The translations under genes were made by a program, and so were the position numbers. A stretch of DNA of 63,878 nucleotides, filler included, from Octopus bimaculoides (Eukaryota), in NCBI RefSeq assembly GCF_001194135.2. It is 6 parts of 6 records of this genome, joined end to end, with 100 filler letters (N's around TTAATTAATTAA, not from the genome) between each part and the next. Parts side by side here need not be neighbours in the genome. Positions count along the whole stretch, not along the records: positions 52,109 to 62,703 come from NC_068986.1; 5 more parts are not named here. One strand, 5' to 3'. How positions within the stretch are numbered: position 1 is the first letter of the stretch; each line of letters starts with the position of its first letter. The notes below the pieces were generated by a model. The model did not search any database, was not told the DNA's origin, and saw only the letters and a list, made by a program, of their open reading frames with translations. Below are positions 9,966 through 62,703 of this stretch, piece by piece.

Positions 9966-10009
9966 CACACATACACACACACACACATATGCACAGATCT
10001 TTTTTTTTT

Positions 10010-10400
10010 ATCTTTTACTTTTACTTCTTCGACTGTGGCCATGCTGGAGCACAGCTTTGAAAAACTTTAGTTGAATAAATCAGCCCCAGGATTTATTATT
10101 TGCTTGGTATTTATTCTATCAGTTTTTTTTTTTGCTGAACCACTAAGTTATGGGGATATAAACACACTAACACCGGTTGTCAAGCGGTGTGTGAGGGTAC
10201 AAACACAGATACAAAGATAGAAAGATGCATGCACGCATGCACACATACACTGACACACACATAAACACATAGATAATTGGCTTCTTCGGGGTTTGTCTAC
10301 CAAATCCAGTCACAAGACTCTGGTCAGGTCAGTCAAACAGTGGGACTGAACCCAGAAGTTTGTGCTCGGGAATCAAACTTCTTACCACACAGACACACCA
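10010..10400 (-). mobile_element. SINE family C
   Basis: Reverse match to both halves of family C. Confidence 0.7.
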
Positions 10401-10421
10401 GTGCCTACACACACACGCACA

Positions 10422-10423
10422 TG

Positions 10424-10457
<34 letters not shown>

Positions 10458-10605
10458 GTTTAACGTCCGCTTTCCATGCTAGCATGGGTTGGACGATTTG
10501 ACTGAGGACTGGTGAAACCGGATGGCAACACCAGGCTCCAATCTAATTTGGCAGAGTTTCTACAGCTGGATGCCCTTCCTAACGCCAACCACTCAGGGAG
10601 TGTAG
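10422..10605 (-). mobile_element. Family D element, young 3' fragment
   Basis: Nearly identical to 62405-62590. Confidence 0.88.
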
Positions 10606-11229
10606 AAAAAGTATTATGACGCCGACGTGATATATATATATATATATATTTTTATATAAGGGCATTACTATACAATAATGCCTCACGCTATGAGGGACTC
10701 TAAGGTCAGACTACCATAAAAAACACATTTTTACCGAACGCGAGGAAATGCAACTCTCAAAGCCAACCCCTTAAAATATTATATACTCTATTAGAAAATC
10801 AATATAAAGAATAGTGATAACGAGAAACCATCATAAACACAAATTATGCAAAATGTCCTGACTTAATGACTCAGGTGTTGTGAAATAAAGGAGTGTTTCA
10901 TTAACCGACATTGTTTTCAATACACCTCCATCTTCTCTCCCCACCTCTTTCTCTCTCTTTGTGAGTGTGTGTGTGTGTGTGCTTGGTTGCATGTGTGTGT
11001 ATGTGTGTGTATGTTTATGAAAGGTTGTACCTTTACGGCAATAAGTAGTGTACCAACTTCTTTCTCTTTTTTAACAGAAAAGAACCAATAAAAAACACAT
11101 ACAAAACAAAAAATAAACCAAACATCATTGTCATCGTCATCATCATCATATCATATATATATATATATAAACATACATAAATATATATAAAAAAAAGAGT
11201 ACGTGCATGGTTTGGTTTTGATTTTGTCA

Positions 11230-12016
11230 ACTACACAGTATAGTAGGGTCAGTTGGGCATTGTCTGTGAGAAAAATAGCTCCATGACACATTTCACTTTG
11301 CCAAAAATTTGAAAACGACATGCTGAAAGCTTCAATACGAACAGATAGTAATCACACAGAACAACCATTGTCTTGCCATGTCCCCAAAACATGTACCGAG
11401 AGTGATAAAAATCAAACATCCAGTCAACATCATGGTGTTTGGAGTGACCACTAGTGATGGCGATGTTATGCCTCCATTCATCTTCCCACACGGCCTCAGA
11501 CTCAACACAGAGGCCAACATCAAATGCCTGAAGGCGGTAGTGCTGCTCCGAGTCAAGAGGGTGGCTGCTGGAAGATCCTATGTCTGGCAACAGGACTCTT
11601 CATGCCACACAAGCAGGAGAACCCAGTCATTGCTGTCAGACAATTTCTGTGACCACATCACCCCTAACATCTGGCCACCTAACTACCCAGACTGCAATGC
11701 TTTGATTATTATGTGTGGGGTGCAGTTGAGCGAGAGACCAACAAATCTCCTTGTAACACCAAGCATGAACTAAAGGCAAGAGTTATGGCAGCATTCACCA
11801 GCTTAAACAAGGAGACTGTCCAGTAGAGTTGCAGGAGATTCTGAAGTTGTCTGGAAGACACGATTGAAGCCAATAGCGATTTTATTGAATAAATTGACCT
11901 TTTTAGTATTTCAAGATAGTTTCATGAAATTTTGGTAAATTTATCTGTTAAAATGAGATGTCAGTGTTATTTCTATTTTTGCATGATTTAGATGACAATA
12001 TATTCACAGCATCATG
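11230..12016 (+). mobile_element. Defective Tc1/mariner-superfamily (maT/DD37D-like) transposon, 3' part
   Basis: IMVFGVTTSDG, YVWQQDS.CHTS, WPPN.PDCN motifs; frameshifted; 5' end not seen. Confidence 0.8.
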
Positions 12017-12065
12017 TATATATGTATTATACATACATACATATGTACGTACATACATACATACC

Positions 12066-12432
12066 TCGTAGCACTCTGTTGGTTACGACAATGTGGGTTC
12101 CAGTTGATCCAATCAACGGAACAGCTTGCTCGTGAAATTAATGTGCAAGTGGCTGAGCACTCCACAGACACGTGTACCCTTAACGTAGTCCTCGGAGAGA
12201 TTCAGCCTGAGAAGGCTGGCCTTTTGAAATACAGGTACAAAAGAAACAGGAAGAAAGAGTGAAGGAATGTTGTGGTGAAAGAGTACAGCAGGGTTTGCCA
12301 TCCCCCCTGCCAGAGCCTCGTGGAGCTTTAGGTGTTTTCGCTCAATAAACACTCACAACGCCTGGTCTGGGAATCGAAGCTGCGATCCTATGACCACGAG
12401 TCCATTGCTCTAACCACTGGGTCACTGTGCCT

Positions 12433-12436
<4 letters not shown>
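12066..12436 (-). mobile_element. tRNA-derived SINE family A
   Basis: Reverse-complement homologue of 967-1352 along its length. Confidence 0.88.
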
Positions 12437-12480
<44 letters not shown>

Positions 12481-13264
12481 GCACACACATATATATGTAT
12501 GCACATGTGTGTATATGTGTGCGTGTTCTTGTTCCCCACCACTGCTTGACAATCTGTGTTGGTTTGTTTATATCCCTGTAACTTAATGGTTTGGCGAAAA
12601 GGATCGGTAGAATAAGTATCACACTACAAAAAAAAAAGCATTCGAGTTAATTTGTCCCCCACACACACACACATACAGAACATGCACACACACACACACA
12701 CATACACACACATGCAACACACATACACACACAAGCGTAACATTTGATAAGCTTTTTCATATACTTAGCAAAGGAGAACTCATCAAACAGCAACACGAAA
12801 AAACTAGAAAAAAAAAGCAAAAATAACAGAAAAAAAAATTATAAAGTGGGTAAAATAAAAGACTACATGAGAAACACTTGGCCTTTTTTTTTTTTTTTTA
12901 GAATACTTCAGCTTTGAGCAGCTGTTAGCACTCTGCAACTGTTCAGTATTCCTCCAACCCTCCCTTGTAATCACCTGCATCGTAGTACGACAACACTAAG
13001 AAATACTTTATATGTCAAATAGCTCACAACCTCCTTTCTGAAGCTGGTCTCTTATGTAACGTTAATATTCTTGCACCCCTTGTCTCTCGAAAAATCATGA
13101 CGAAAAATAAGATGAATTGTATCATTGCTCAGCTGACAATATTCTGTTTTTTTTTTAACTGTGATTCATCACAAGTGGTTGGGGTAGACCCACTGATGTT
13201 GGTGCCTCTGGTAATATATGTAAAAAAAAACATAATAAGGAGGTGAAGTGCCAGAATTGTTAGC

Positions 13265-13425
13265 ACAGGCGTGGCTGTGTGGTAAGAAGCTTGCTTCCCA
13301 ACCACAAGGCTCCAGGTTCAGTTCCACTGCATGATGCCTTGGGCAAGTGTCTTCTACTGTAGCCTCGAGCTGACCAAAGCCTTGTGAGTGGATTTGGCAG
13401 GTTGAAACTGAAAGAAGCCTGTCAT
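13265..13425 (+). mobile_element. SINE family C, 5' half
   Basis: GGCGTGGCTGTGTGGTAAGAAGCTTGCTTCC head, GGTTCAGTTCC B box, CCTTGGGCAAGTGTC. Confidence 0.8.
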
Positions 13426-13552
13426 ATGTGTATATATATATACCCCTCTTGTTCTTCCTCTGTTACTACTACGTATCTCTTTTTTCCCCCTCGTATTTCC
13501 TCTTTTTCTTTTTTCCTCTCGTTGCTCACCATTCTTCTACTTCCTCCCTCTC

Positions 13553-13652
13553 NNNNNNNNNNNNNNNNNNNNNNNNNNNNNNNNNNNNNNNNNNNNTTAA
13601 TTAATTAANNNNNNNNNNNNNNNNNNNNNNNNNNNNNNNNNNNNNNNNNNNN
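13553..13652. other. Artificial contig-join spacer (44N-TTAATTAATTAA-44N)
   Basis: Identical 100-bp design at five sites; the 12-mer puts stops in all six frames. Confidence 0.95.
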
Positions 13653-13687
<35 letters not shown>

Positions 13688-13911
13688 TATATGTAGGTAT
13701 GTATGTTTGTATGTATATAAGCAAAATGAGTTAAGAGAAATAATTTAGAGTGCCCAGCGGCAAGTATCTTAATTACATATACAAATACAGATATATCAAA
13801 TATCGCTGTACAGAAATTAATTTGCATAATTTAAACAAAAACGAGATAGATATAACTCCGAGTGGTCAAGACAAGCACAAGCAAATCAAATAGCATGTAA
13901 CATAAATTCCT

Positions 13912-14013
13912 GATTTATTAAAGTTATCTCCCTCTCTAGAGAACGTATCTTAATCCCCAAATGGCAGTTAATTATGGTGTATCCTATAGGAGAGGGGGTA
14001 ATTGTAATAAATC
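13912..14013. repeat. Small MITE-like element with imperfect ~24-bp terminal inverted repeats
   Basis: GATTTATTAAAGTTATCTCCCTCT versus AGAGGGGGTAATTGTAATAAATC. Confidence 0.45.
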
Positions 14014-14654
14014 AAGGCTTAGATCTCGTTTATAGAATTACAAGAAACGGGTGCACAACTCGTGGGCCTTGCCACAGGGTAAAAGGGTGGGAAAAAAAAG
14101 TCGTCTGAGGTTCTATGTGGTCACTAGACTGGTTAGAGATAGTAACCAAATTTCTCCTCAAATTGCACCAAATCTTCTTTAATTCTTAGGAAAGGGTTGA
14201 ATGAATTGTGTGCCGAGCAGGCAAAAAACAAAAATATCTCTGTTTTTGTTTTTAAGGATAATTTTTATACTTAAGTAAGTATAAATAAGTACAAAAACAA
14301 CTGTAATTGCTAATCTCTCCTGCAATAAGATTTATAATCTTATTATCGAAAAGTGCCGTAAAATATTCACTTTCCTTTGCACCGGTCGTGAGATTCCCGT
14401 TTGCTGATGTCAAACGAATGGACAGTTTAATTCTTTCAGTCGTTGGATAGTGGCCATGTTGGGGTACCTTCAACGTGGTGCCCCAGTCGAACCCATCGTG
14501 TCCAGCACTTTTTTTTTCATTATTAAATCTGATATAAAACTGTCCGACGAATGGGAACATGAAACTCTGAGTAACAGTTTTTGTGATATTTTTGCTGCTT
14601 TTTAATCTTGTAAAAGATCTTATCCTATTATTGAATTATATATATATATATATA

Positions 14655-14812
14655 TATATGACAGGCTTCATTCAGTTTCTGCCTACCAAATCCACTCACA
14701 AGGCTTTGGTCGGCCCAGGACTATACCAGAAGACACTTGCCCAAGGTGCCACGCAGTGGGACTGAACCTGAAACAATATGGATGGAAAGCAAGCTTCTTA
14801 CCACACAGCCCC
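14655..14812 (-). mobile_element. SINE family C, 5' half
   Basis: Reverse match to the family C head. Confidence 0.78.
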
Positions 14813-15683
14813 GCCATGGCTGCAAAATGATCTTTTTAACCACACACCAATCCCCACGTGTGGATGATCATAAGTTTCGTTTCTTTCTCTCACCAATCAC
14901 CCATTGATGGATGGATACTGTTATTGGAAAGTAGTCAAGTAGCAAATATAGACGTAATTTTTCTCTTGTTATTTTATTTGTTATCTCATAAAATATTTGA
15001 TTAGATTTATGTTACATATAAATTAGACACACACAGTCATAACATTCTGCCGAGCTTTACATAACTAATCTCTCACACTGTCTCCTCTCTCTCTCTCTCT
15101 CTCTATGTATCTGTCTATGTATTTCTCTCTTTCCGATGATATACCCTCCTACTTTCACCGCCGTCTCTCTCTCTATCTTTCCTCCATCTCACCATTTTGT
15201 TTTTATCTTTCTGTCTATCTAACGATATCGTTCTCATTGCGTCTGTCTCTCCATTCCACAATTATCTTCATACACAACACGCGCGTATTCCCCTATCATC
15301 CTATTTCTCTCAATTTCTTTTTCTGTTTCTATCTACTTATCCCTGCATCTATCGTCTGCTCTCTCCCTCTCTCCCTCTCTCCCTCACTCACTCTCTCATT
15401 CGCTTCTTCTCCCGCCTTCCCTCACTCTCTCCCTAAATCACTCGTCACTCTCGCACTCACTCACTCCCTCTCTCTCTCCATCATTCTTTTAGCCTCCCCC
15501 ATTCTACGCAGTTCTCAAAAGTCTGCAGTTTCAGAGAACGTTCACTTCATATTAGATTGGCAAGTTTCCAAAATGAAGAAAAAATATAAATATATATTTA
15601 AAAATTTATTTGACTTTCATTCTCTGTCAGAACATCTTCAGTTAAGGTGAGATATTCAGCTATGTGGCAACACCTGTCGCAGA

Positions 15684-15684
<1 letters not shown>

Positions 15685-15731
<47 letters not shown>

Positions 15732-15925
15732 GGTGGTGGTGGTGGCAGAGGCGGGTGGTAGGTGTGATTGTAGTGCTAATGGTGGTGGCGCTGACTGTGT
15801 TGGTGGCGATGATGGAGAAGGCTGTCGTTGTGGCGGTGATGGTGGTAGCGGTGTTTATGATGATGGTGCTGGTGGTGTTTATGGAGGTGGGGCTGCTACT
15901 GCTGCTGCTACTACTACTATTAGAG
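15685..15925. repeat. Compound trinucleotide tract (GAT)(GGT)(GCT)(ACT)
   Basis: Directly visible. Confidence 0.9.
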
Positions 15926-16529
15926 GTGGTAAAATTTAGATGTTGTGGCGATGCTCTTCAGCAGAGATGTTCAGACATTAATATCGAAATACAGATGTTG
16001 TTTATTGTATGAGTAAACATGACATGTAGACTATTACAGCTGTATCACGTGACGAAGATGTCTTCTATGCACAAGATAAGACAAGAGTGCTTCGTCGCCA
16101 TATTGTTACTGTTGTTCAGTTGTTGTTCAACCCCACCACTCCCACCTTGCCTCTCCTCACCTTTCACCCGTGCCCGAAGAGTCTTGGTTGAAGAATCCTA
16201 TGGTCAGAGGTATTCTAGTCATAATCATACCATACTTTAGATAAAGCAAGGGCAGCAGCGTAGCTGGTCGGTGATCGAAGGGGCCAGGGAGACAGGAAGA
16301 TCTGGTTGCTATTTCTAGCATATCGAGTGAGCACGTAGAGGCACCTGATGAATATATTTATTGAAAATGCTTGTAATCACCTGATTAGCTTATTGTATGA
16401 TACAAATATAAGCGCTCTAGCCCTTAACTCTTTACACTCGAAAGTCGGGTGGTCCACATCCTGATCATGGCTTCTGGATAGCCATTTGCTGCCACATTCT
16501 GTAAGTATGTTATTGTCATTATCGTTGTC

Positions 16530-16975
16530 TAGCTGGCAGAATCGTTAGCGCGCCGGACAAAACGCTTAGCAGCTTTTCGTCCGTCTTCACGTGCTGAGTT
16601 CAAATTCCGCGGCAGTCGACTTTGCCTTTCATCTTTTCAGGAATGATAAAATAAGAACCAGTCGAGTGCTGGGGGTCGATGAAATCGACTAGGCCCCTTC
16701 CTCCGCCTAAAATCTCAGGGCTTGTGACGGTAGTAGAAAGGATTATTAGAGAGAACGCAAGGCGACGAACTGGCTGAATCGTTAGCACGCCGGGCAAAAT
16801 GCTTCACGGCATTTCGTCCTTCTTTACATCCTGAGTTCAAATTCCACCGAAGTCGACTTTTCTCTTCATCCTGTCAGAGGTCGATAAAGTAAGTACCAGT
16901 TGAGTACTGGGGTCGATGTAATCGAAATACGCCCCTCCTCTTAAACTCCAGACCTTGTGTTTATGGTTAATTTGC
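16530..16975 (+). mobile_element. Two tandem copies of SINE family B
   Basis: Same head, B box and central motif; CpGs retained. Confidence 0.82.
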
Positions 16976-23596: not shown

Positions 23597-23715
23597 GTAC
23601 ATTAGTTTTGACGGATATTTGTCCTCATCTTGTTTGTTGTTAACACAACGTTTCGGCTGATATACCCTCCAGCCTTCATCAGGTGTCTTGAGGAAATTTT
23701 ATTTTTCGATGTTGG

Positions 23716-52108: not shown

Positions 52109-52346
52109 CGGGTGGCACATAAAAGACACCATTTCGAGCGTGGCCGTTTTCGTGCGGGTGACACGTAAAAGCACCCACTACACTCTCTGAGTGGTTGGCG
52201 TTAGGAAGGGCATCCAGCTGTAGAAACTCTGCCAAATCAGACTGGAGCCTGGTGTTGCCATCCGGTTTCACCAGTCCTCAGTCAAATCGTCCAACCCATG
52301 CTAGCATGGAAAGCGGACGTTAAACGATGATGATGATGATGATGAC
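52109..52346 (+). mobile_element. Family D element, young, ending 20 nt before a GTPBP4 acceptor
   Basis: Near-identical to the reverse complement of 62420-62685 apart from a ~22-bp indel; (GAT)6 tail. Confidence 0.9.
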
Positions 52347-52366: not shown

Positions 52367-52511
52367 AATACATGAAAAGAGACAACTGATGATCTTAGAG
52401 TCACGAGAAAGGCGAAAGGCATCAAAAATACCAAGATCTAAATTAGTTGTTGGAACTGTTGGTGATTTGGAGCAACAAATGGATGACTTGGGCTTACAGT
52501 TAGAACGTGCA
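52367..52511 (+). CDS. GTPBP4: GTPBP4/NOG1 antepenultimate coding exon (IHEKRQLMILESRERRKASKIPRSKLVVGTVGDLEQQMDDLGLQLERA)
   Basis: Acceptor ttttgttttcttttttAG (52365-52366), donor GTAAGT at 52512; 145 nt, splices in frame to the next exon. Peptide is colinear with the recalled GTPBP4 segment IREKKKLKILESKEK...PRMPR...LEKEMRSLG. Confidence 0.93.
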
Positions 52512-53176: not shown

Positions 53177-53311
53177 GAGAAAAACTACTCAACACAAAGA
53201 TCCCGTAGTACAACACGCAGGCCTTTGAAACGAAAGAGAGAAGATTCTCAAGCAGCCATGCGTAGCTCTTCCAGGACTCCTCGAGATCGATCTGGTTTAC
53301 GAGATGAAACG
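53177..53311 (+). CDS. GTPBP4: GTPBP4/NOG1 penultimate coding exon (EKNYSTQRSRSTTRRPLKRKREDSQAAMRSSSRTPRDRSGLRDET)
   Basis: Acceptor tttctgtttcAG, donor GTACAT at 53312; 135 nt, phase 0/0. RSRS-KRKREDS-SRTPRD-SGLRD motifs typical of the NOG1 C-terminus. Confidence 0.95.
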
Positions 53312-54514: not shown

Positions 54515-54715
54515 TGACAATTTGGCAAAACTCTTCACACGCCAGACGAAGTTGTTAGTGATATTTTTCTCAGCTTTTTAAATTCTGAATTCAAATTTTG
54601 CCAAGGTTGACTTAGCCTTTCATCTATTCATAAGTACTGGTTGAGTACTGGGATTAATGTAATCGACTTACTCACTCCCCTCAAAATTGCTGCCCTTGTT
54701 TCTCAGTTAGAAATT
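54515..54715 (+). mobile_element. Diverged SINE family B in the last GTPBP4 intron
   Basis: TTCTGAATTCAAATT..GTTGACTTAGCCTTTCATC..AAGTACTGG motif. Confidence 0.65.
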
Positions 54716-54938: not shown

Positions 54939-55091
54939 ATGGTCAATAAAGTAAGAAAGATGACACGCAAGGCTATGAAGTCCTTCACAATGGACGGACG
55001 TAAAGGAGAATCTGATCGACACATTCATGATTTGAAACCAAAACATATTTTCAGTGGTAAACGTGGTATTGGAAAGACACAGAGACGATAA
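54939..55091 (+). CDS. GTPBP4: GTPBP4/NOG1 terminal coding exon ([50 protein letters not shown])
   Basis: Acceptor tatttcAG, 153 nt ending TAA. Ends in the hallmark NOG1 motif GE.DRH..D.KPKH..SGKR..GK..RR. Confidence 0.97.
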
Positions 55092-55139
55092 TTTTTATGA
55101 GATAAATGCTTGTTGGATGATTTCATTGAGATTTTCTGA

Positions 55140-55145
55140 ATTAAA
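55140..55145 (+). promoter_or_regulatory. Probable GTPBP4 polyadenylation signal ATTAAA
   Basis: ATTAAA 49 nt after the stop, followed by a T/GT-rich tract at about 55168-55195. Confidence 0.5.
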
Positions 55146-55202
55146 AAGAAATTCTAATAATACGCTGGTTTTTCTGTATTTTAATTTGTGTGTGTATGAG
55201 GA

Positions 55203-55576
55203 GTGGAGGCGCAATGGCCCAGTGGTTAAGGCAGCGGACTCGTGGTCATAGGATCGCGGTTTTGATTCCCAGACCGGGTGTTGTGAGTGTTTATTGAGCA
55301 AAAACACCTAAAGCTCCACGAGGCTCCGGCAGGGGATGGTGGCGAACCCTGGTGTACTCGTTCACCACAGCTTTCACTCACTCTTACTTCCTGTTTCTGT
55401 TGTACCTGTAATTCAAAGGGCCAGCCTTGTCAAACTGTGTCATGCTGAATATCCCCCGAGAACTACATTAAGGATATACGTGTCTGTGGAGTGCTCAGCC
55501 ACTTGCACGTTAATTTCACGAGCAGGCTGTTCCGTTGATCGGATCAACTGGAACCCTCGACGTCGTAAGCGATGGA
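55203..55576 (+). mobile_element. tRNA-derived SINE family A, full length with 13-bp TSD
   Basis: Near-identical to 967-1352; TSD GTGTGTATGAGGA at 55190-55202 and 55577-55589. Confidence 0.92.
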
Positions 55577-56565
55577 GTGTGTATGAGGAAGATTGGCTTG
55601 AAGTTGACTCCTGACAGGGCTTGTGATTGCTGATTGGAGAGCTTTTGTTGTCTGATACCCCATGACATGTGGGATGGTCTGCAACTGAGTAAGAGAGGTT
55701 GGTTGGTTATTTATTGCCACCTTCCTTTTAATGTGTATTTATTTAAATGGCATGCAGAAGTTTTTCGGGCTGCTTTTGGCAACTTTTGAAATATTTACTA
55801 TGCTTTTAACATAAAGGCAAGTAAATAATTTATTTAGAGATTCCAATCCAGTTTACCCATGGTATTGAAAGAATACAATAAAATTGAATATTACATAAAG
55901 TTTAATAATTACAGAAACTGGTGTTCTGCATCAGCCAAAATCATTTAATAAATTAACAAAGTAAGAAAAATTTGTATGTTTAAGATAACACTGCAAATCA
56001 AATACATTTATAGAATACTATCCTAAACATGAAAAAAATTTATTTCTTTGAAGAAAGGTTTTATTTGAAACATCAATTCTTGCGTATCTTCACAACATAC
56101 AAATTTATCCAAATCTCATAATTTTTATAAAATGTTTTTAGCTTTTGTGGACGGAAAACAAAAACGTGATTTATTAATTTTTAAAAAATTACTCTATTTT
56201 TTAGCTTGGGTCAATATTTTAATATGTCTTACCATATAGGTAACGGTTAAGACAATTCAGCACTACAGAATCTCTTCATCCAATCCTAAATCTTCCTCAC
56301 TCTGACTCTTGTGTCACCTAGTATCAGTTTCAAGCAAGCATCATCCAGTGATCTGTCTACATTTTTCAAAGCATTTTATACCCTAGATTTGATTCTCTTC
56401 TTGGCAACCATTCTTGGAATATACTCAACTCTGACCTTTCAGACTACAACATTCCCATGTTGTTATACATATGCTTTTCAAATGGAGATTAGCTGTCTGT
56501 TGTTAATTGAGTAAAGAGATTCTTTACTTGTCTTTGTTCCTTTCAAGCATCATATTAGTAAGCTA

Positions 56566-56790
56566 AAAGGTAGTGAGCTGGCAAAATCATTAGTGTGTTG
56601 GACAAAATGCTTAGTAGCATTTCTTCTGACTGTTTACATTCTAAGTTCAAATACCAATGAGATTAACTTTGTCTCATCCTTTCAAAGTTGATATAATTAG
56701 CACCACTTTAAGCCCTGGTGTCAATGTAATCAACTCCCCACCACCACTACCACCAAAAAAAAAAAATTGTCCTTTTGTCAAAGTTTATGA
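56566..56790 (+). mobile_element. Diverged, CpG-depleted SINE family B
   Basis: Colinear with family B, with consensus CpGs as TG/CA. Confidence 0.7.
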
Positions 56791-57049
56791 CCATACATAT
56801 AGACTAAACTGAAACACTAACTACCACTCTACACAGAAACTCAAATGTAAAAACAATATTGAACCAAAGGAACTTGTGTGGATGTTCAATCTACTAGAAA
56901 TAGCAACCATATCTCATTCAGATCACACCCTACTGTTATAAAAAGGGCTAATGTGATTATAGCTGAAATACTTTTGATTATAAGTCTGCTCAACCAGGGC
57001 TAACATGTGTACTAACATAACATCATATAGCAACAGTTGTCAATGCAAA

Positions 57050-57270
57050 GCTTCACAATCTTTCTTGATATCCTCACATCTATAGCATTACCAAAACATT
57101 ATAAAAAAACTGGAATTCCTCTTAAGAGTCAGGAAGTACTTCAGCTCAGCTGCATGCTGTTTACACAACTTAAGGCCCTCCACTACTGTACTGCTCATAT
57201 TTATGGGATGGTGTGCTGCTACATATGCTAGCATCTACTAGAAGACCATTTAACTGATTGGCAAAAATCC
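57050..57270 (+). mobile_element. CR1/L2-like RT fragment
   Basis: KLEFLLRVRKYFSS..RP..YCSYLWDG across frameshifts. Confidence 0.55.
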
Positions 57271-57497
57271 AGCTACTGACTCACAAACGTTCTACTTTTT
57301 TTTTTTCTATGTCTCTGCTCTTGCTATTACAATGATTTCCCTACTCTTGAATAAAATGCATGTGTGTACTCTCAACCAATATGTATCTCTTTATATTTGA
57401 CTAATAACAACTGCTGTTGAGGTAAATAAAGCATTCTATCATCATATCATTTGACAGTAACATAAGCTGAGCATTTTTCCTATTCATAAATGTTATA

Positions 57498-57600
57498 ACT
57501 TGGAGAGGCATATGACAAGATCCCACACATACTCTGTAATGTGGTGGGTGCTGAGAAAGCAGAGAATAGTCAAAGACATGAGGACAGTTATGATTTAGAG
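57498..57600 (+). mobile_element. RTE-like RT fragment
   Basis: LE.AYDKIPH..SVMWWVLRK after frameshift correction. Confidence 0.55.
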
Positions 57601-57844
57601 TTTCTTGGAGGTTTCTATGCTCTGATGGCCTCGTTCTTATTTCAAAATATGTTAAGTAGCACATTAACCCTTTTGATACCAAGTTGCTTGAGGACACCTC
57701 TGGTTCTCTGATACAAAAAATGTCCTTTACAGATCTAAACAATTATCACAGATATTCCAAAATCTATATATCCAGATGATTTATGTTCAATATATAAAAT
57801 GTGATATTTTTCTTGATCAACTTAAAATTAGGTGCATCAGTTTT

Positions 57845-57990
57845 GGAGTTAAGAAGCTTGCTTCCCAATCACATGGTTTTGGGTTCAGTCCCACTGCACG
57901 AAACTTTGCCAAGTGTTTTTCGACTAGATCTCTGGGCTGACCAAAGCCTTGTTAGTGGATTTCATTGATAAATACTGAAAGAAGCCCATT
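57845..57990 (+). mobile_element. SINE family C, 5' half, diverged
   Basis: GTTAAGAAGCTTGCTTCCCAATCACATGG..GGTTCAGTCCC. Confidence 0.7.
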
Positions 57991-58859
57991 GTATACACAT
58001 ATATATATGTTTTGTGTATGTGTTGGTCTCTTCTTTTCTCCACATAGATGCAAACAAGCATCACTGTCTTGGAAGCAGTGTCCTTCACTAACAGTCTTCT
58101 GTGAAAATAGATACAGCTATGGTGAAATACTACCCTACTTGGAAACAGGTAAGGGTTGGTGATAGTAAAAGCATCTAGCCACAGAAAATCTGCCTCAACA
58201 AATTCCACCTGACCTATGAGAGCATGGAAAAGTGGACACTGAAGTATTAATGACAATATATATATATATATATCTTTATGTGAGTGCATGCATAAATGAT
58301 ATTCCACATTGATCAGTTGAATAAAAAAATTTTAAAAACCTGGTTAAGAGTTAGCAACAGTAAAGGCATCTGACTGCAAAATGCTGCCTCAAATACTCAT
58401 ATGTCTCCATCTAACCCATGCTAACTTGGAATAACAAATATTTAACAAATGAACGATGTGAACCAAGAGCGAAATCCTGTCTTTTGTATCTTTGCCTACG
58501 TAAGAAAGTGTGTGACTGTCGTGGATATTCTTATTTAAACGAAGTTCCTTAATTCTAACAAGCAGTAGGAGTTATCTATCCTTGAAAAATCAGAAAAGGA
58601 ATTTTTAACTCCTATTTCTAAATTCGGTATGTGGTGAAGCAATTAGCTGACCCCTAATTATAATTATGTTTATAATCATAGAATATTCTTTATTTAAGGC
58701 NNNNNNNNNNNNNNNNNNNNNNNNNNNNNNNNNNNNNNNNNNNNNNNNNNNNNNNNNNNNNNNNNNNNNNNNNNNNNNNNNNNNNNNNNNNNNNNNNNNN
58801 NNNNNNNNNNNNNNNNNNNNNNNNNNNNNNNNNNNNNNNNNNNNNNNNNNNNNNNNNNN

Positions 58860-58892
<33 letters not shown>

Positions 58893-58911
58893 CTCCCTTA
58901 AACCACATATA

Positions 58912-59056
58912 TATGCGTAGGAGTGGCTGTGTGGTAAGTAGCTAGCTTACCAACCACATGGTCCCGGGTTCAGTCCCACTGCGCGGCATCTTGGCCTCGG
59001 GCCGACCAAAGCCTTGTGAGTGGATTTGGTAGACGGAAACTGAAAGAAACCCGTTG

Positions 59057-59091
<35 letters not shown>

Positions 59092-59295
59092 ATGTTTGTA
59101 TGTGTGTGTTTGTCCCCCAACATCGCTTGATAACCGATGCTAGTGTGTTTATGTCCCCGTAACTTAGCGTTTCAGCAAAACAGATCGATAGAATAAGTAC
59201 TAGGCTTCTAAAGAATAAGTCCTGGGGTCGATTTGCTCGACTAAAAGGCGGTGCTCCAGCATGGCCACAGTCAAAAGACTGAAACAAGTAAAAGA
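58912..59295 (+). mobile_element. SINE family C, full length
   Basis: Head, (TA)(TG) tract at about 59056-59110, 3' half. Confidence 0.87.
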
Positions 59296-59691
59296 GTAAT
59301 ATATATAAATAAAAAATTCCACTTTGACTCAACCTTTTTACTGCAGACATCAGATATATATATATATATATATATATATCACCTCAAAATTTCATTACCC
59401 TTAACAGCAGAAAGCAGTTTTCTACATCAATCTATCTTTTGTTTGGGAATGTCATGTTTGAAATTATTTTTTGTTGAAATACATCAAGTTTACTGAGGTA
59501 ATGTGACTTGCGCGAAAATCCCCTTTTATTTTTTGGTTGATATTTAAAATCATTACTGGAATAATCACAAAATTAGATATCACAGTTAGAGACTTAAAGT
59601 AATTAATTTTAATTATCTTGTAAATGATGAAAATACTTATTTTTTTGGTCTCAATTGAAATAAGACAATATTTAATAAAAATATATTTTTT

Positions 59692-59702
59692 TTTATTTTA
59701 TT
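59692..59702 (-). promoter_or_regulatory. Two overlapping AATAAA polyadenylation signals of the ASDURF-like gene
   Basis: Plus-strand TTTATT at 59692-59697 and 59697-59702, about 42-47 nt past the stop on the minus strand. Confidence 0.6.
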
Positions 59703-59743
59703 TACATTTTACAGAAACAAACAAATTTCTTAGAGAAATATTT

Positions 59744-59808
59744 TCAGCTTGTTTTGGGTGTCATTTGTTCCAAATTTTTCATCTCTTCTTTCAGTTTTGC
59801 TATGGAAT
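59744..59808 (-). CDS. ASDURF: ASDURF-like microprotein, terminal exon (DSIAKLKEEMKNLEQMTPKTS*)
   Basis: Acceptor aaatttatttttcAG at 59810-59809. Phase-compatible with the 61168 donor (G+AT = Asp). Coiled-coil-like, aligns with ASDURF SKNILDELKKEYQEIE; TGA at 59746-59744. Confidence 0.78.
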
Positions 59809-60171
59809 CTGAAAAATAAATTTGTATCACAAATTTAAGGATTATTTGAAACCTTATGTATTCAGTTTATTTGCAGAATAAACTGCAGCTAAAAATCTCT
59901 CACCCATTTACTCTTTGTAATTAAAGATATAACAAATATAACCCTTTTTAGACATTTTTCTTATGTTGTTAATGTTTTAAAGTCTTCTGGGTCAGGCTAT
60001 CCTTTCTTACAAATCTCCTCATTTATGCATCTCTATTTCTCTATAGTCAGGAGATAATATGAGTAGTAAATTATCTCTTAGCTAAAGACAAAAACTACGT
60101 CAGTATTGAATAAACAAATTTAAAATAGTGCAATAGTGATAATGAAGAAATTTCTCACACTGTCAACTCAT

Positions 60172-60390
60172 AATGGTTTCAAATTTTGGCACAGGGTCAA
60201 CAGATTTTGAGGGGAGGAGGAAGTTAGATTACATTGACCCCAGTACTTAACTGGTATTTATTTTATTGACTCTGAAAAGATGAAAAGCAAAGCTGACCTC
60301 AGCAGAATTTGAGCTCAGAATGTAAAGGCAGACAAATTGCTGCTAAGCATTTTGTCTGGCATGCTAATAATTCTGCCAACTTGCTGTCTT
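60172..60390 (-). mobile_element. Diverged, CpG-depleted SINE family B in the ASDURF-like intron
   Basis: Reverse-complement match to family B. Confidence 0.75.
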
Positions 60391-61167
60391 ACTGAAAACT
60401 CATAACAAAAAAACCGAAAGCTTTAATAATCTGAATCCAGAGAGAAAAACTTTGGAGAAGTGGCAACATCAATATATTCTTTGTTCATTCATTTAACATC
60501 GGTTTTTCTATCATTTGTTTGAAAAGAGACTTGAGTCAGTATTTTTATGGCTAGATGCATTTGCTGTTGCCAACCATTATAATTTTTCAAGTAAGTGATT
60601 GATCTTCAAAATTGTAGAACAACTAACTGGTCAGAATGTCAACAAAGAATGTAAACATTATATAGCTCTTTTGCTGAAATAGTGACAAACAAAATTGTAG
60701 AATATCATCATTTATGTACACACATACACACAACAGGCTTCCATACAGTTTCTGCCAACCAATATGATTTGCAAGGCATTGGTCAGCCTGGAGCTATAGT
60801 AGAAGACATTTGCTCAAGGTATGTGCTGTCTAATAGAGCTAAACATGAAACCATGTGGTTGTGGAGCAAAATTTCATTCTTTCATTATTTCCTCTATAAA
60901 ACCTAACTTTCTAAGTTCTACTAAAATACATGAAGCCATAGAGATTAGCTTATTATCAAAAGACAAGTTTATTCTGCAGCATAAGAAACTCTTCAGCAGA
61001 ATGACTCAATAAAAATGGATTCATGTGAACAGCATAAAAAGATATCAAATTGAAAGATGTTAGCAAAAGGTAATCTAAGATTACCATTTAACTTATGAGA
61101 TAAAATTATTTTAAACATTGATGAATAAGATATTACAAATGAAGAGAGAGAAAAAAAAACAGAATAC

Positions 61168-61246
61168 CTTGACACTGAAGTGACACTTTGTCTTTATTGT
61201 CTACCTTAAAGAATATGTTACTGTTTGGTTGTTGATTATAAAAATT
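61168..61246 (-). CDS. ASDURF: ASDURF-like prefoldin-type microprotein, penultimate exon (NFYNQQPNSNIFFKVDNKDKVSLQCQ)
   Basis: Minus-strand acceptor ttgcttatctttcAG, donor GTATTC at 61167; 79 nt. FYNQQPNSNIFF matches recalled human ASDURF VYRQQQNSNIFF at 9 of 12 positions. Confidence 0.8.
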
Positions 61247-62404
61247 CTGAAAGATAAGCAATTAAAATATTTGAAGCTTACTGCACACAAATATTCAATA
61301 ATGTTTTGTAATATAAAGAAGTGAAGATGACTGGACTAAACACTATATTTAAGTTTGTTTCTCTTGGTTTTGAACTCAAATCATGCTAGAGTTTAAATTT
61401 GCATTTATCAACTCTAATATGTGTTAAATAAATATCTGTAATGTGCTCAGATCAATTCAAATGTCTATAAAAATTGACATTGTGCTTATTTAAAAGAACT
61501 TGTGAAGATTACGTGATGGAATTTGGCAATAATTTATAAATTTGTTACAAAAATTGCATTAGCTTTTTGGTTAAGATACATTATTAATAAGTTAATAAAC
61601 CAAGGCTTAAAAAAAAACAACAATTCTATTCTGTATTTGCTGATTCTAATAAATACATTTTAACGAAGTACAATAACTGTGATGTTCTCTGCTCATGAGC
61701 AAAGTATAAAGCTATTTAGATGAATGTGCCAAACAGAAAACACATTCCACTTTTAGACTATGTGGATTACTTGTAAAAAAAAAAATTATCACCATAACCA
61801 TTACCGCCATCATCATTGTCATTTTGAGTCTGCTTTTCCATGCTTGCATGCATGGAATAGGTTATCAATGGTAATGTTTTATGGCTGGCTGCTTTTCTTG
61901 TTGCCAGTTCTTTTAGTCACTTCTTGCAACAAACAATAATGTAGTGTAGCTATTTACTTATTCTAAAATGGGAATACAAACAATAACTTGTAGGAAAAGC
62001 AGCGCTGGTACCACACAAAAAATGCATCCAATACACAGTATAAAGAATCTGGTGTTAGGAAGAGCATCCAGCTGTGAAAACCGTTCCAAAATGAGAAGAG
62101 ACTGCTCTCCAGAGTGTGGTCTCTTAGCCACATCCAGAAGGGCAAACGAACTGACTGAATTGTGATGATTTCTCCAACCCATAATAACATGGAAAGCAGA
62201 CATAAGATGAGGTTGATTAAACAATATTTAATTTGCTGACACATGTCATATGTCCTCTCTCTACCTTTAAAACTGCCACAGAGGTTTTGTGATAAACTCA
62301 ATGATTATGTCATTTCCACTTTTGTCAATACCAGTCCTGCAACTAAATGCCATGCTAAAGACTGAGTAATCTTATCTACAGAGCTGTACATTTCATTGAA
62401 ACAT

Positions 62405-62703
62405 GCAGCATTTCCATAGATCATCATCATCATCATCATCATCGTTTAACGTCCGCTTTCCATGCTAGCATGGGTTGGACGATTTGACTGAGGACTGGTG
62501 AAACTGGATGGCAACACCAGGCTCCAATCTAAATTTGGCAGAGTTTCTACAGCTGGATGCCCTTCCTAACGCCAACCACTCAGAGAGTGTAGTAGGTGCT
62601 TTTACGTGTCACCTGCACGAAGGCCAGTCAGGCGATACTGGCAACGGCCACGCTTGAAATGGTGTCTTTTATGTGCCACCCGCACAAGCCAGTCCAGGGG
62701 CAC
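62405..62703 (-). mobile_element. Family D element, young, cut by the block end
   Basis: (CAT)n CGTTTAACGTCCGCTTTCCATGCTAGCATGGGTTGG... Confidence 0.9.

What the first reader, a model, noticed from the sequence alone, without database searches (positions are those of the whole stretch)
59692..61246. Hidden ASDURF-like microprotein gene that appears stand-alone, not an ASNSD1 uORF
Seen: two small minus-strand exons (61246-61168, 59808-59744) with canonical, phase-compatible GT-AG sites. They join to NFYNQQPNSNIFFKVDNKDKVSLQCQDSIAKLKEEMKNLEQMTPKTS*, followed ~45 nt later by two AATAAA. Known: human ASDURF is a 96-aa prefoldin-like PAQosome subunit encoded by an upstream ORF of the ASNSD1 mRNA; its recalled motif VYRQQQNSNIFF plus a C-terminal coiled coil matches. 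Inference: there is no ASNSD1 ORF in the ~4.6 kb before the convergent GTPBP4 stop, and the single 159-N gap there is too small to hide one. So the microprotein seems to be its own transcription unit here, and the bicistronic arrangement is not shared. Its 5' exon(s) were not found in this block.
Basis: partly seen in the sequence, partly recalled or inferred. Interest (0 to 1): 0.8.

Follow-up and report, generated by a model that had tools for sequence, protein, structure and literature searches.

The report
Octopus stand-alone ASDURF prefoldin-like gene
These are the last two exons of an ordinary four-exon octopus gene for an 87-residue ASDURF-type prefoldin-like chaperone subunit. The gene stands alone between NAA35 and GTPBP4 rather than upstream of ASNSD1, and it is already in the public protein databases.

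Summary
They end at TGA 59746-59744, with AATAAA 42 nt downstream.

The peptide is identical to the C-terminal 47 residues of an 87-aa Octopus bimaculoides protein in UniProt (A0A0L8HPQ0, 'Uncharacterized protein'). That protein already carries Pfam PF21975 (ASNSD1-SEP). Octopus vulgaris has an orthologue, CAI9724162.1. The full protein passes the Pfam cut-off (34.7 bits against 27) and aligns with human ASDURF (E=4e-10). So the gene is ASDURF-like, but it is not hidden.

In O. vulgaris it is a four-exon gene lying NAA35(-) | ASDURF(+) | GTPBP4(-). I found no ASNSD1 homology in the 4.65 kb downstream in the window, nor anywhere in the 25-kb gap-free O. vulgaris locus. The stand-alone reading is therefore supported, but transcripts were not examined and ASNSD1 was not located in the genome.

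A stand-alone ASDURF orthologue is already published for Arabidopsis (At1g49245). Exons 1 and 2 lie beyond the end of the piece. This is a correct but ordinary finding.

The parts
61168..61246 (-). Coding exon 3 of 4 of the ASDURF-like gene. It encodes residues 41-66 (NFYNQQPNSNIFFKVDNKDKVSLQCQ) plus the first base of codon 67. This is the predicted beta-hairpin/loop region that carries the family motif.
   Evidence: Sequence and splice sites are. Pfam PF21975 gives 15.3 bits for this exon alone. It matches residues 41-66 of P0009 at 100%. It differs from O. vulgaris at 1 of 79 nt.
59809..61167 (-). Intron 3 (1359 nt, GT...AG, phase 1). It contains an interspersed-repeat copy at about 60191-60383.
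   Evidence: It is about 94-95% identical to the O. vulgaris intron, which carries an extra 246 nt.
59744..59808 (-). Coding part of terminal exon 4. It encodes residues 67-87 (DSIAKLKEEMKNLEQMTPKTS), the C-terminal helix, and the stop codon TGA at 59746-59744.
   Evidence: It is 65/65 nt identical to O. vulgaris. Joining it to exon 3 raises the Pfam score from 15.3 to 20.8 bits.
59671..59743 (-). Probable short 3' UTR with poly(A) signals: AATAAA at 59702-59697 and 59697-59692, and ATTAAA at 59676-59671. The cleavage site is inferred to lie near 59650-59680.
   Evidence: The first AATAAA and the ATTAAA are conserved in O. vulgaris; the second AATAAA is not. Collinear alignment with O. vulgaris breaks at about 59654-59672, where O. 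vulgaris carries a 1.3-kb retroelement insertion. The 3' end is inferred; no transcript data were examined.
55092..59743 (.). A 4652-nt interval between the ASDURF-like stop and the convergent GTPBP4 stop. It holds repeats, microsatellites and a 159-N gap (58701-58859), and no ASNSD1 coding sequence was detectable.
   Evidence: Pfam on the minus-strand frames found no Asn_synthase or GATase. tblastn with ASNSD1 gave a best E of 4.4. A MCGIL start-like motif at 57530 reads MCRML in O. vulgaris. The N run is shown.
54939..55091 (+). Last coding stretch of the convergent neighbour GTPBP4/NOG1 (…[29 protein letters not shown]). Earlier 3' exons lie near 52389-52500 and 53225-53310.
   Evidence: The ORFs are. 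Homologues named GTP-binding protein 4 / nucleolar GTP-binding protein 1 carry PF08155. The O. vulgaris neighbour is a 628-aa product with NOG1_N, NOG1 and NOGCT.
62424..62682 (.). An interspersed (SINE-like) repeat inside intron 2. It is absent at this spot in O. vulgaris and fills the last ~280 nt of the piece, so exon 2 (and exon 1) fall beyond 62703.
   Evidence: It is 89% identical over 259 nt, inverted, to 52109-52345. Collinear alignment to O. vulgaris starts only at 62421, which corresponds to L001 12326, 159 nt downstream of O. vulgaris exon 2.

Best explanation
The two exons are coding exons 3 and 4 of a monocistronic, four-exon octopus gene. The window is most likely Octopus bimaculoides.

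The gene encodes an 87-residue orthologue of ASDURF, the beta-type prefoldin-like subunit of the prefoldin-like module of the PAQosome (R2TP/PFDL co-chaperone). By inference from the human and Arabidopsis proteins, the product is a helix / beta-hairpin / helix protein. It would assemble through its hairpin and coiled coils with URI1, UXT, PDRG1, PFDN2 and PFDN6 into a hetero-hexamer.

In octopus the gene lies between NAA35 (divergent) and GTPBP4 (convergent). It ends at its own poly(A) signal about 45 nt after the stop codon. It is not an upstream ORF of an ASNSD1 mRNA.

What is shown: exon structure, homology, conservation, synteny, and the absence of ASNSD1 downstream. What is inferred: the transcript ends, monocistronic expression, and the role in the complex.
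For: - Splice sites and translation are.
- phmmer against 1.84 billion representative proteins finds an 87-aa protein, P0009, whose residues 41-87 are 100% identical to the peptide (E=6e-23).
- P0009 is UniProt A0A0L8HPQ0 from O. bimaculoides. Its cluster mate P0013 is O. vulgaris CAI9724162.1.
- P0009 scores E=2e-8 and 34.7 bits on PF21975 ASNSD1-SEP, above the 27-bit cut-off. The next-best relevant family is Prefoldin_2, at E=0.017.
- BLASTP against human ASDURF gives 28% identity and 59% positives over 81 residues, E=4e-10. The human sequence was recalled from memory and checked: it scores 213.7 bits over the whole PF21975 profile.
- The AlphaFold2 single-sequence model has helices at 9-44 and 61-81 with a loop between them.
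- The O. vulgaris locus reads NAA35(-), a four-exon ASDURF-like gene with canonical GT-AG introns and a good Kozak context (aaaATGG), then GTPBP4(-).
- Exons are 143/144 nt identical between the species, against 94.6% for introns.
- No ASNSD1 was found.
- A conserved AATAAA follows the stop codon.
- The human ASDURF coding sequence also spans four exons (PMC10187264).
- The stand-alone precedent is At1g49245, a PFDL-complex member by AP-MS (bioRxiv 10.1101/2023.12.13.571423; PMC10893143).
Against: - No RNA-seq, long-read or 3'-end data could be examined, so the transcript boundaries are inferred.
- ASNSD1 could not be located elsewhere in the octopus genome, so 'unlinked' cannot be told apart from 'lost'.
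- The window-encoded 47-mer alone is below the Pfam cut-off (20.8 against 27 bits).
- The beta-hairpin was not resolved in the single-sequence model (pLDDT below 50 at residues 49-57). Foldseek against the PDB returned nothing, and no ASDURF structure exists in the PDB for comparison.
- The two octopus species are only about 5% diverged, so conservation is a modest test.
Confidence: 0.85

Rival explanations
1. The microprotein ORF is still the upstream cistron of a longer ASNSD1 transcript, as in vertebrates. On this reading the ASNSD1 exons were missed because they are small or diverged, hidden in the assembly gap, or reached by alternative splicing past the terminal exon.
For: The bicistronic ASDURF-ASNSD1 mRNA is the described arrangement in human and is under purifying selection across vertebrates (PMC13303939; PMC10187264). 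Short exons are hard to detect: the ASDURF exons themselves were not picked up in the six-frame Pfam scan. There is a 159-N gap at 58701-58859.
Against: - Only 4.65 kb separate the stop codon from the convergent GTPBP4 stop.
- The gap-free O. vulgaris interval (8.36 kb) shows no ASNSD1 similarity (best tblastn E=15). Its extra DNA is an antisense reverse-transcriptase fragment plus repeats.
- The gap corresponds to about 460 bp in O. vulgaris.
- The only start-like motif, MCGIL at 57530, is followed by a stop after 16 codons and is not conserved (MCRML).
- Two independent annotations call the gene as an 87-aa stand-alone product.
Confidence: 0.04
2. The ORF is a chance or decaying sequence (a pseudogene or spurious gene model) that merely resembles ASDURF.
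For: The region is AT-rich (about 25-33% GC), where K/N/E-rich coiled-coil-like ORFs and AATAAA motifs arise easily (AATAAA occurs 2.1 times per kb). The 47-mer alone is below the Pfam gathering score. There are no hits in the PDB.
Against: - The full-length product passes the Pfam threshold and aligns end to end with human ASDURF.
- All four exons keep an intact ORF and canonical splice sites in O. vulgaris.
- The exons are significantly more conserved than the introns.
- The four amino-acid differences between the two species are conservative: L/H, A/V, V/I and F/Y.
Confidence: 0.03
3. It is a diverged canonical beta-prefoldin (for example a PFDN1-like paralogue) that works in the classical prefoldin complex, rather than the ASDURF orthologue.
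For: There is a weak Prefoldin_2 match at E=0.017. ASDURF is itself beta-prefoldin-like and has been proposed to be able to replace PFDN1 (bioRxiv 10.1101/2023.12.13.571423).
Against: PF21975 scores 34.7 bits against 15.6 for Prefoldin_2. Human ASDURF shows the same weak Prefoldin_2 signal, 18.6 bits. The hairpin motif NSNIFF is shared with human ASDURF.
Confidence: 0.05

Closest known systems
Human ASDURF (ASNSD1 upstream open reading frame protein, UniProt L0R819; Pfam PF21975)
   Same: It is a small protein (87 against 96 aa) with the same helix / hairpin / helix layout. It shares the Y.QQ.NSNIFF hairpin motif. It is 28% identical and 59% similar over 81 residues. Its coding sequence is split over four exons in both species (PMC10187264). 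Its presumed role is as the beta-type subunit of the prefoldin-like module of the PAQosome.
   Different: The human protein is translated from a uORF in the 5' leader of the ASNSD1 mRNA. The octopus gene has no ASNSD1 downstream and lies between NAA35 and GTPBP4. Octopus lacks the roughly 10-20 residue disordered N-terminal extension. Whether the intron positions are the same was not tested.
Arabidopsis ASDURF orthologue At1g49245 ('Prefoldin chaperone subunit family protein')
   Same: It is a stand-alone locus that encodes an ASDURF orthologue. It was shown by AP-MS to sit in the prefoldin-like complex with URI, UXT, PDRG1, PFD2 and PFD6 (bioRxiv 10.1101/2023.12.13.571423; PMC10893143). The gene organisation is the same in principle as in octopus.
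   Different: It is a plant protein. I did not have its sequence and made no direct comparison here.
Octopus vulgaris CAI9724162.1 ('Hypothetical predicted protein', chromosome OX597819.1)
   Same: It is the direct orthologue: 87 aa with 4 substitutions, the same four-exon structure and the same neighbours.
   Different: Its intergenic spacer to GTPBP4 is 8.4 kb rather than 4.65 kb, because of a retroelement fragment and repeats. It lacks the SINE-like insertion in intron 2.
Canonical beta-prefoldins (PFDN1/2/4/6; Pfam PF01920 Prefoldin_2)
   Same: They share the overall coiled-coil / hairpin / coiled-coil architecture, and there is a weak profile similarity (E=0.017).
   Different: The score is below the family threshold (15.6 against 27.6 bits). 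The protein is also shorter than typical beta-prefoldins.

Membership tests
ASDURF / Pfam PF21975 (ASNSD1-SEP) | Match to the family profile above the curated gathering score (27 bits) | tested here: met
   Full-length P0009, whose last 47 residues are encoded in the window, scores 34.7 bits at E=2e-8 over profile positions 21-89 of 96. The window-encoded 47-mer alone scores 20.8 bits at E=4e-4.
ASDURF / Pfam PF21975 (ASNSD1-SEP) | Conserved hairpin motif (human VYRQQQNSNIFF) placed between two helices in a protein of about 90-100 aa | tested here: met
   The octopus sequence is NFYNQQPNSNIFF at residues 41-53 of 87. It aligns with human residues 49-62. The human sequence was recalled from memory and validated at 213.7 bits on PF21975.
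ASDURF / Pfam PF21975 (ASNSD1-SEP) | Beta-prefoldin fold (N-terminal helix, beta-hairpin, C-terminal helix) | tested here: inconclusive
   The AlphaFold2 single-sequence model has H9-44, a loop at 45-60 with pLDDT below 50, and H61-81, with mean pLDDT 75.9. The helices fit the fold but the hairpin is not resolved. Foldseek against the PDB gave no matches.
ASDURF / Pfam PF21975 (ASNSD1-SEP) | Encoded as an upstream ORF of the ASNSD1 mRNA (the name-giving arrangement in vertebrates) | tested here: not met
   No Asn_synthase or GATase domain and no ASNSD1 similarity were found downstream in the window or anywhere in the 25-kb O. vulgaris locus. The next gene is the convergent GTPBP4. This feature describes gene organisation, not the protein family, and Arabidopsis At1g49245 also lacks it.
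ASDURF / Pfam PF21975 (ASNSD1-SEP) | Physical membership of the prefoldin-like module (URI1, UXT, PDRG1, PFDN2, PFDN6) of the PAQosome | not testable with these tools
   This is known for human (Cloutier et al. 2020, as cited in PMC8567396; Hofman et al., PMC10187264) and for Arabidopsis (bioRxiv 10.1101/2023.12.13.571423). For octopus it needs AP-MS or complex modelling.
ASDURF / Pfam PF21975 (ASNSD1-SEP) | Coding sequence split over four exons, with shared intron positions | tested here: inconclusive
   The number matches: four coding exons in O. vulgaris and 'spans four exons' in human (PMC10187264).
Canonical beta-prefoldin (Pfam PF01920 Prefoldin_2) | Match above the gathering score (27.6 bits) | tested here: not met
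   The score is 15.6 bits at E=0.017. Human ASDURF behaves the same way, at 18.6 bits.

The most novel reading that the evidence does not exclude
The stand-alone, four-exon gene seen in octopus, and as a separate locus in Arabidopsis, is the ancestral state of ASDURF. On this reading the vertebrate ASDURF-ASNSD1 bicistronic mRNA is a derived fusion, in which an independent prefoldin-like gene was captured into the 5' leader of a neighbouring ASNSD1 gene. Octopus would then be an outgroup for dating how a functional two-protein mRNA arose in animals.
Probability: 0.55. Interest if true: 0.35.

Novelty: already known. Interest (0 to 1): 0.15.

Why it matters
ASDURF is a textbook case of a functional protein encoded by a uORF. 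Knowing in which lineages it is a separate gene says when and how a bicistronic animal mRNA arose.

The octopus locus adds one data point: the gene is stand-alone, has four exons, and sits between NAA35 and GTPBP4. That fits the reading that the vertebrate arrangement is derived.

The protein is already in UniProt with the Pfam assignment, the O. vulgaris annotation calls it as its own gene, and a stand-alone plant orthologue is published. The practical gain is therefore mainly a better name for two 'uncharacterized' or 'hypothetical' cephalopod proteins.

Tried and rejected
1. A word-indexed homologue search with the 47-mer found no candidates. Only the exhaustive phmmer search found the 87-aa protein. 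Its other three hits (P0010-P0012) are repetitive or low-complexity proteins and were dismissed.

2. I looked for exons 1 and 2 in 61247-62703 by reading the frames and by tblastn. They are absent, because the piece ends inside a repeat in intron 2.

3. I tried to recover the organism's own GTPBP4, so as to fetch flanking DNA. Only distant homologues came back, 44% identity at best.

4. A six-frame Pfam scan for ASNSD1 domains found none. Its sensitivity to short exons is low.

5. The MCGIL motif at 57530, which is a typical start for a class-II amidotransferase or ASNSD1, was pursued and rejected. The ORF stops after 16 codons and reads MCRML in O. vulgaris.

6. PDB sequence searches with the 47-mer, with P0009 and with human ASDURF gave no hits. 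Foldseek with the model gave none either.

7. A look-up of contigs for P0009 found nothing on record.

8. The supplements of the Drosophila conserved-smORF catalogue do not mention ASDURF or ASNSD1. Cloutier et al. 2020 is not held.

9. Rfam and tRNA scans of the piece found nothing. The bacterial promoter/terminator scan does not apply to a eukaryote.

Full report
**1. The observation**

Reading the minus strand confirms both exons.
- Exon 61246-61168 is 79 nt. It is preceded by ttatctttcag and followed by gtattc.
- Exon 59808-59744 is preceded by ttatttttcag and ends in TGA at 59746-59744.

AATAAA begins at 59702 and 59697, and ATTAAA at 59676. AATAAA is common here, at 2.1 per kb on this strand, so it is weak evidence by itself. 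The first AATAAA and the ATTAAA are conserved in Octopus vulgaris.

**2. Is it ASDURF-like?**

The 47-mer hits Pfam PF21975 (ASNSD1-SEP) at E=4e-4 and 20.8 bits, on profile positions 50-89 of 96. The first exon alone gives 15.3 bits, so the second adds to the score.

The word-indexed protein search found nothing. An exhaustive phmmer search of 1.84 billion representative proteins found P0009. This is an 87-aa protein whose residues 41-87 are identical to the peptide (E=6e-23). Its sequence is METALMFSDEYLAERKTEASRKLQEFIVLQEELKTIKKDA followed by the 47-mer.

P0009 is UniProt A0A0L8HPQ0, 'Uncharacterized protein', from Octopus bimaculoides, and PF21975 is already precomputed for it. Its 90%-identity cluster also holds O. 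vulgaris CAI9724162.1, 'Hypothetical predicted protein'. The window is therefore almost certainly O. bimaculoides, and the gene is not hidden.

The full-length protein passes the Pfam cut-off, at 34.7 bits against 27 and E=2e-8. It also gives a weak Prefoldin_2 signal at E=0.017.

Human ASDURF was written from memory and then checked: it scores 213.7 bits over the whole PF21975 profile. It aligns with P0009 over 81 residues at 28% identity and 59% positives, E=4e-10, including Y.QQ.NSNIFF.

A single-sequence AlphaFold2 model gives helices at 9-44 and 61-81, separated by a low-confidence loop. This is compatible with a beta-prefoldin layout but does not prove it. Foldseek and sequence searches of the PDB returned nothing, and no ASDURF chain is deposited.

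**3. Gene structure and neighbours**

The O. vulgaris gene was fetched with 10-kb flanks as L001 (OX597819.1:47886425-47911720, no Ns). The called genes are:
- NAA35 (Mak10/TPR_NAA35) on the opposite strand upstream;
- the 87-aa PF21975 gene at 10001-15296;
- a 628-aa NOG1/GTPBP4 gene on the opposite strand, starting at 23655.

tblastn and inspection give four coding exons in L001: 10001-10066, 12114-12167, 13504-13582 and 15232-15296. All have canonical GT-AG introns, and the start context is aaaATGG.

The window aligns collinearly with L001 from 12326 onward, which corresponds to window 62421. Upstream of that point the window carries a SINE-like repeat at 62424-62682. This repeat is 89% identical, inverted, to 52109-52345.

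The human uORF is reported to span four exons of the ASNSD1 5' UTR (PMC10187264). The exon number is thus the same, but intron positions could not be compared.

**4. Conservation**

The two window exons are 143/144 nt identical to O. vulgaris. The single change is TTC to TAC, giving F to Y. Aligned intron and flanking sequence is 94.6% identical (2387/2523). The binomial P is 0.003, and only 2 of 2380 sliding 144-nt intron windows are equally conserved. The four amino-acid differences over 87 residues are conservative.

**5. Is ASNSD1 downstream?**

The interval from the stop codon (59744) to the convergent GTPBP4 stop (55091) is 4652 nt, including 159 Ns.
- A Pfam scan of the three minus-strand frames of 55000-62703 found no Asn_synthase or GATase domain.
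- A human ASNSD1 probe was recalled from memory and validated: Asn_synthase 65.8 bits and GATase_7 24 bits. It gave no tblastn hit better than E=4.4 in the piece, or E=15 in the whole 25-kb O. vulgaris locus.
- The O. vulgaris spacer is longer (8358 nt). The extra DNA is an antisense reverse-transcriptase fragment (RVT_1, E=3e-9) plus interspersed repeats.
- The stretch corresponding to the N gap is about 460 bp in O. vulgaris.
- One lead was followed and rejected. MCGIL at 57530 looks like the N-terminus of a class-II amidotransferase, but the ORF stops after 16 codons and reads MCRML in O. vulgaris.

So in two octopus species the gene is not followed by ASNSD1.

**6. Mechanism**

The following is inferred from the family. 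The protein is the beta-type prefoldin-like subunit that joins URI1, UXT, PDRG1, PFDN2 and PFDN6 in the prefoldin-like module of the PAQosome. This role is shown for human (Cloutier 2020, as cited in PMC8567396; PMC10187264) and for Arabidopsis (bioRxiv 10.1101/2023.12.13.571423).

In octopus the protein would be made from its own short mRNA. Its synthesis would then not be coupled to ASNSD1 translation by leaky scanning or re-initiation.

**7. Comparison and novelty**

The ASDURF-ASNSD1 bicistronic mRNA is the described arrangement in human and is conserved in vertebrates (PMC13303939). A stand-alone ASDURF orthologue is already published for Arabidopsis, At1g49245 (PMC10893143).

The octopus protein and its Pfam assignment are already in the public databases, and the O. 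vulgaris annotation calls it as its own gene. The finding is correct but ordinary. Its residual value is a better name for two cephalopod 'uncharacterized' proteins. It also adds one data point for the idea that the vertebrate arrangement is a derived fusion.

**8. Verdict**

- Observation: confirmed.
- Interpretation: partly supported. ASDURF-like is supported. Stand-alone is supported at the DNA level. 'Hidden' is not supported, and the surprise is overstated.
- Interest: 0.15.

Noticed in passing
window 52109-52345 (+) and 62424-62682 (inverted): Two copies of an interspersed, SINE-like repeat sit at the two ends of the piece, 89% identical over 259 nt. A third copy, about 78% identical, lies in O. 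vulgaris at L001 6042-6260. The copy in intron 2 is absent at the orthologous spot in O. vulgaris, so it is a lineage-specific insertion.
   Followed up: partly
window 54518-54699, 56576-56738, 60191-60383; L001 7579-7815, 10735-10904, 14018-14181, 20253-20638 and others: A second short interspersed repeat family (about 70-80% identity, roughly 170 nt) is scattered through the GTPBP4 intron, the intergenic spacer and ASDURF intron 3. It has many copies in the O. vulgaris locus.
   Followed up: no
L001 15786-16691 (minus strand of the locus), within the O. vulgaris insertion L001 ~15387-16678: A 302-codon open frame with a reverse-transcriptase domain (RVT_1, E=3e-9; YADD motif) is inserted antisense about 90 nt after the ASDURF-like stop codon in O. 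vulgaris. It is absent from the window. The insertion point coincides with the inferred poly(A) region.
   Followed up: partly
window 60900-60999 and 61400-61499 (intron 3 and intron 2 of the ASDURF-like gene): Two 100-nt intronic bins are 100% and 99% identical to O. vulgaris, against a 94.6% background. This could be chance among 28 bins or a small conserved intronic element. Rfam found nothing here.
   Followed up: no
window 57483-57530 (-): A short ORF, MCGILSYASPSYNIYE*, mimics the N-terminus of a class-II glutamine amidotransferase or ASNSD1. It is not conserved in O. vulgaris (MCRML) and is judged a chance match.
   Followed up: yes
window 58860-58894, 59057-59094, 59351-59380, flanking the N gap at 58701-58859: (TA/TG)n-type microsatellites, which read as YIYIYI in translation, flank the 159-N assembly gap and recur nearby. 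The same microsatellite is at L001 18347-18386. They are the likely cause of the assembly gap.
   Followed up: no
window 52389-52500, 53225-53310, 54939-55091 (+): These are the three 3'-terminal coding exons of GTPBP4/NOG1, convergent with the ASDURF-like gene. The NAA35 | ASDURF | GTPBP4 neighbourhood is shared by O. bimaculoides and O. vulgaris. From general knowledge, and not tested here, it differs from the human locations of these genes.
   Followed up: partly
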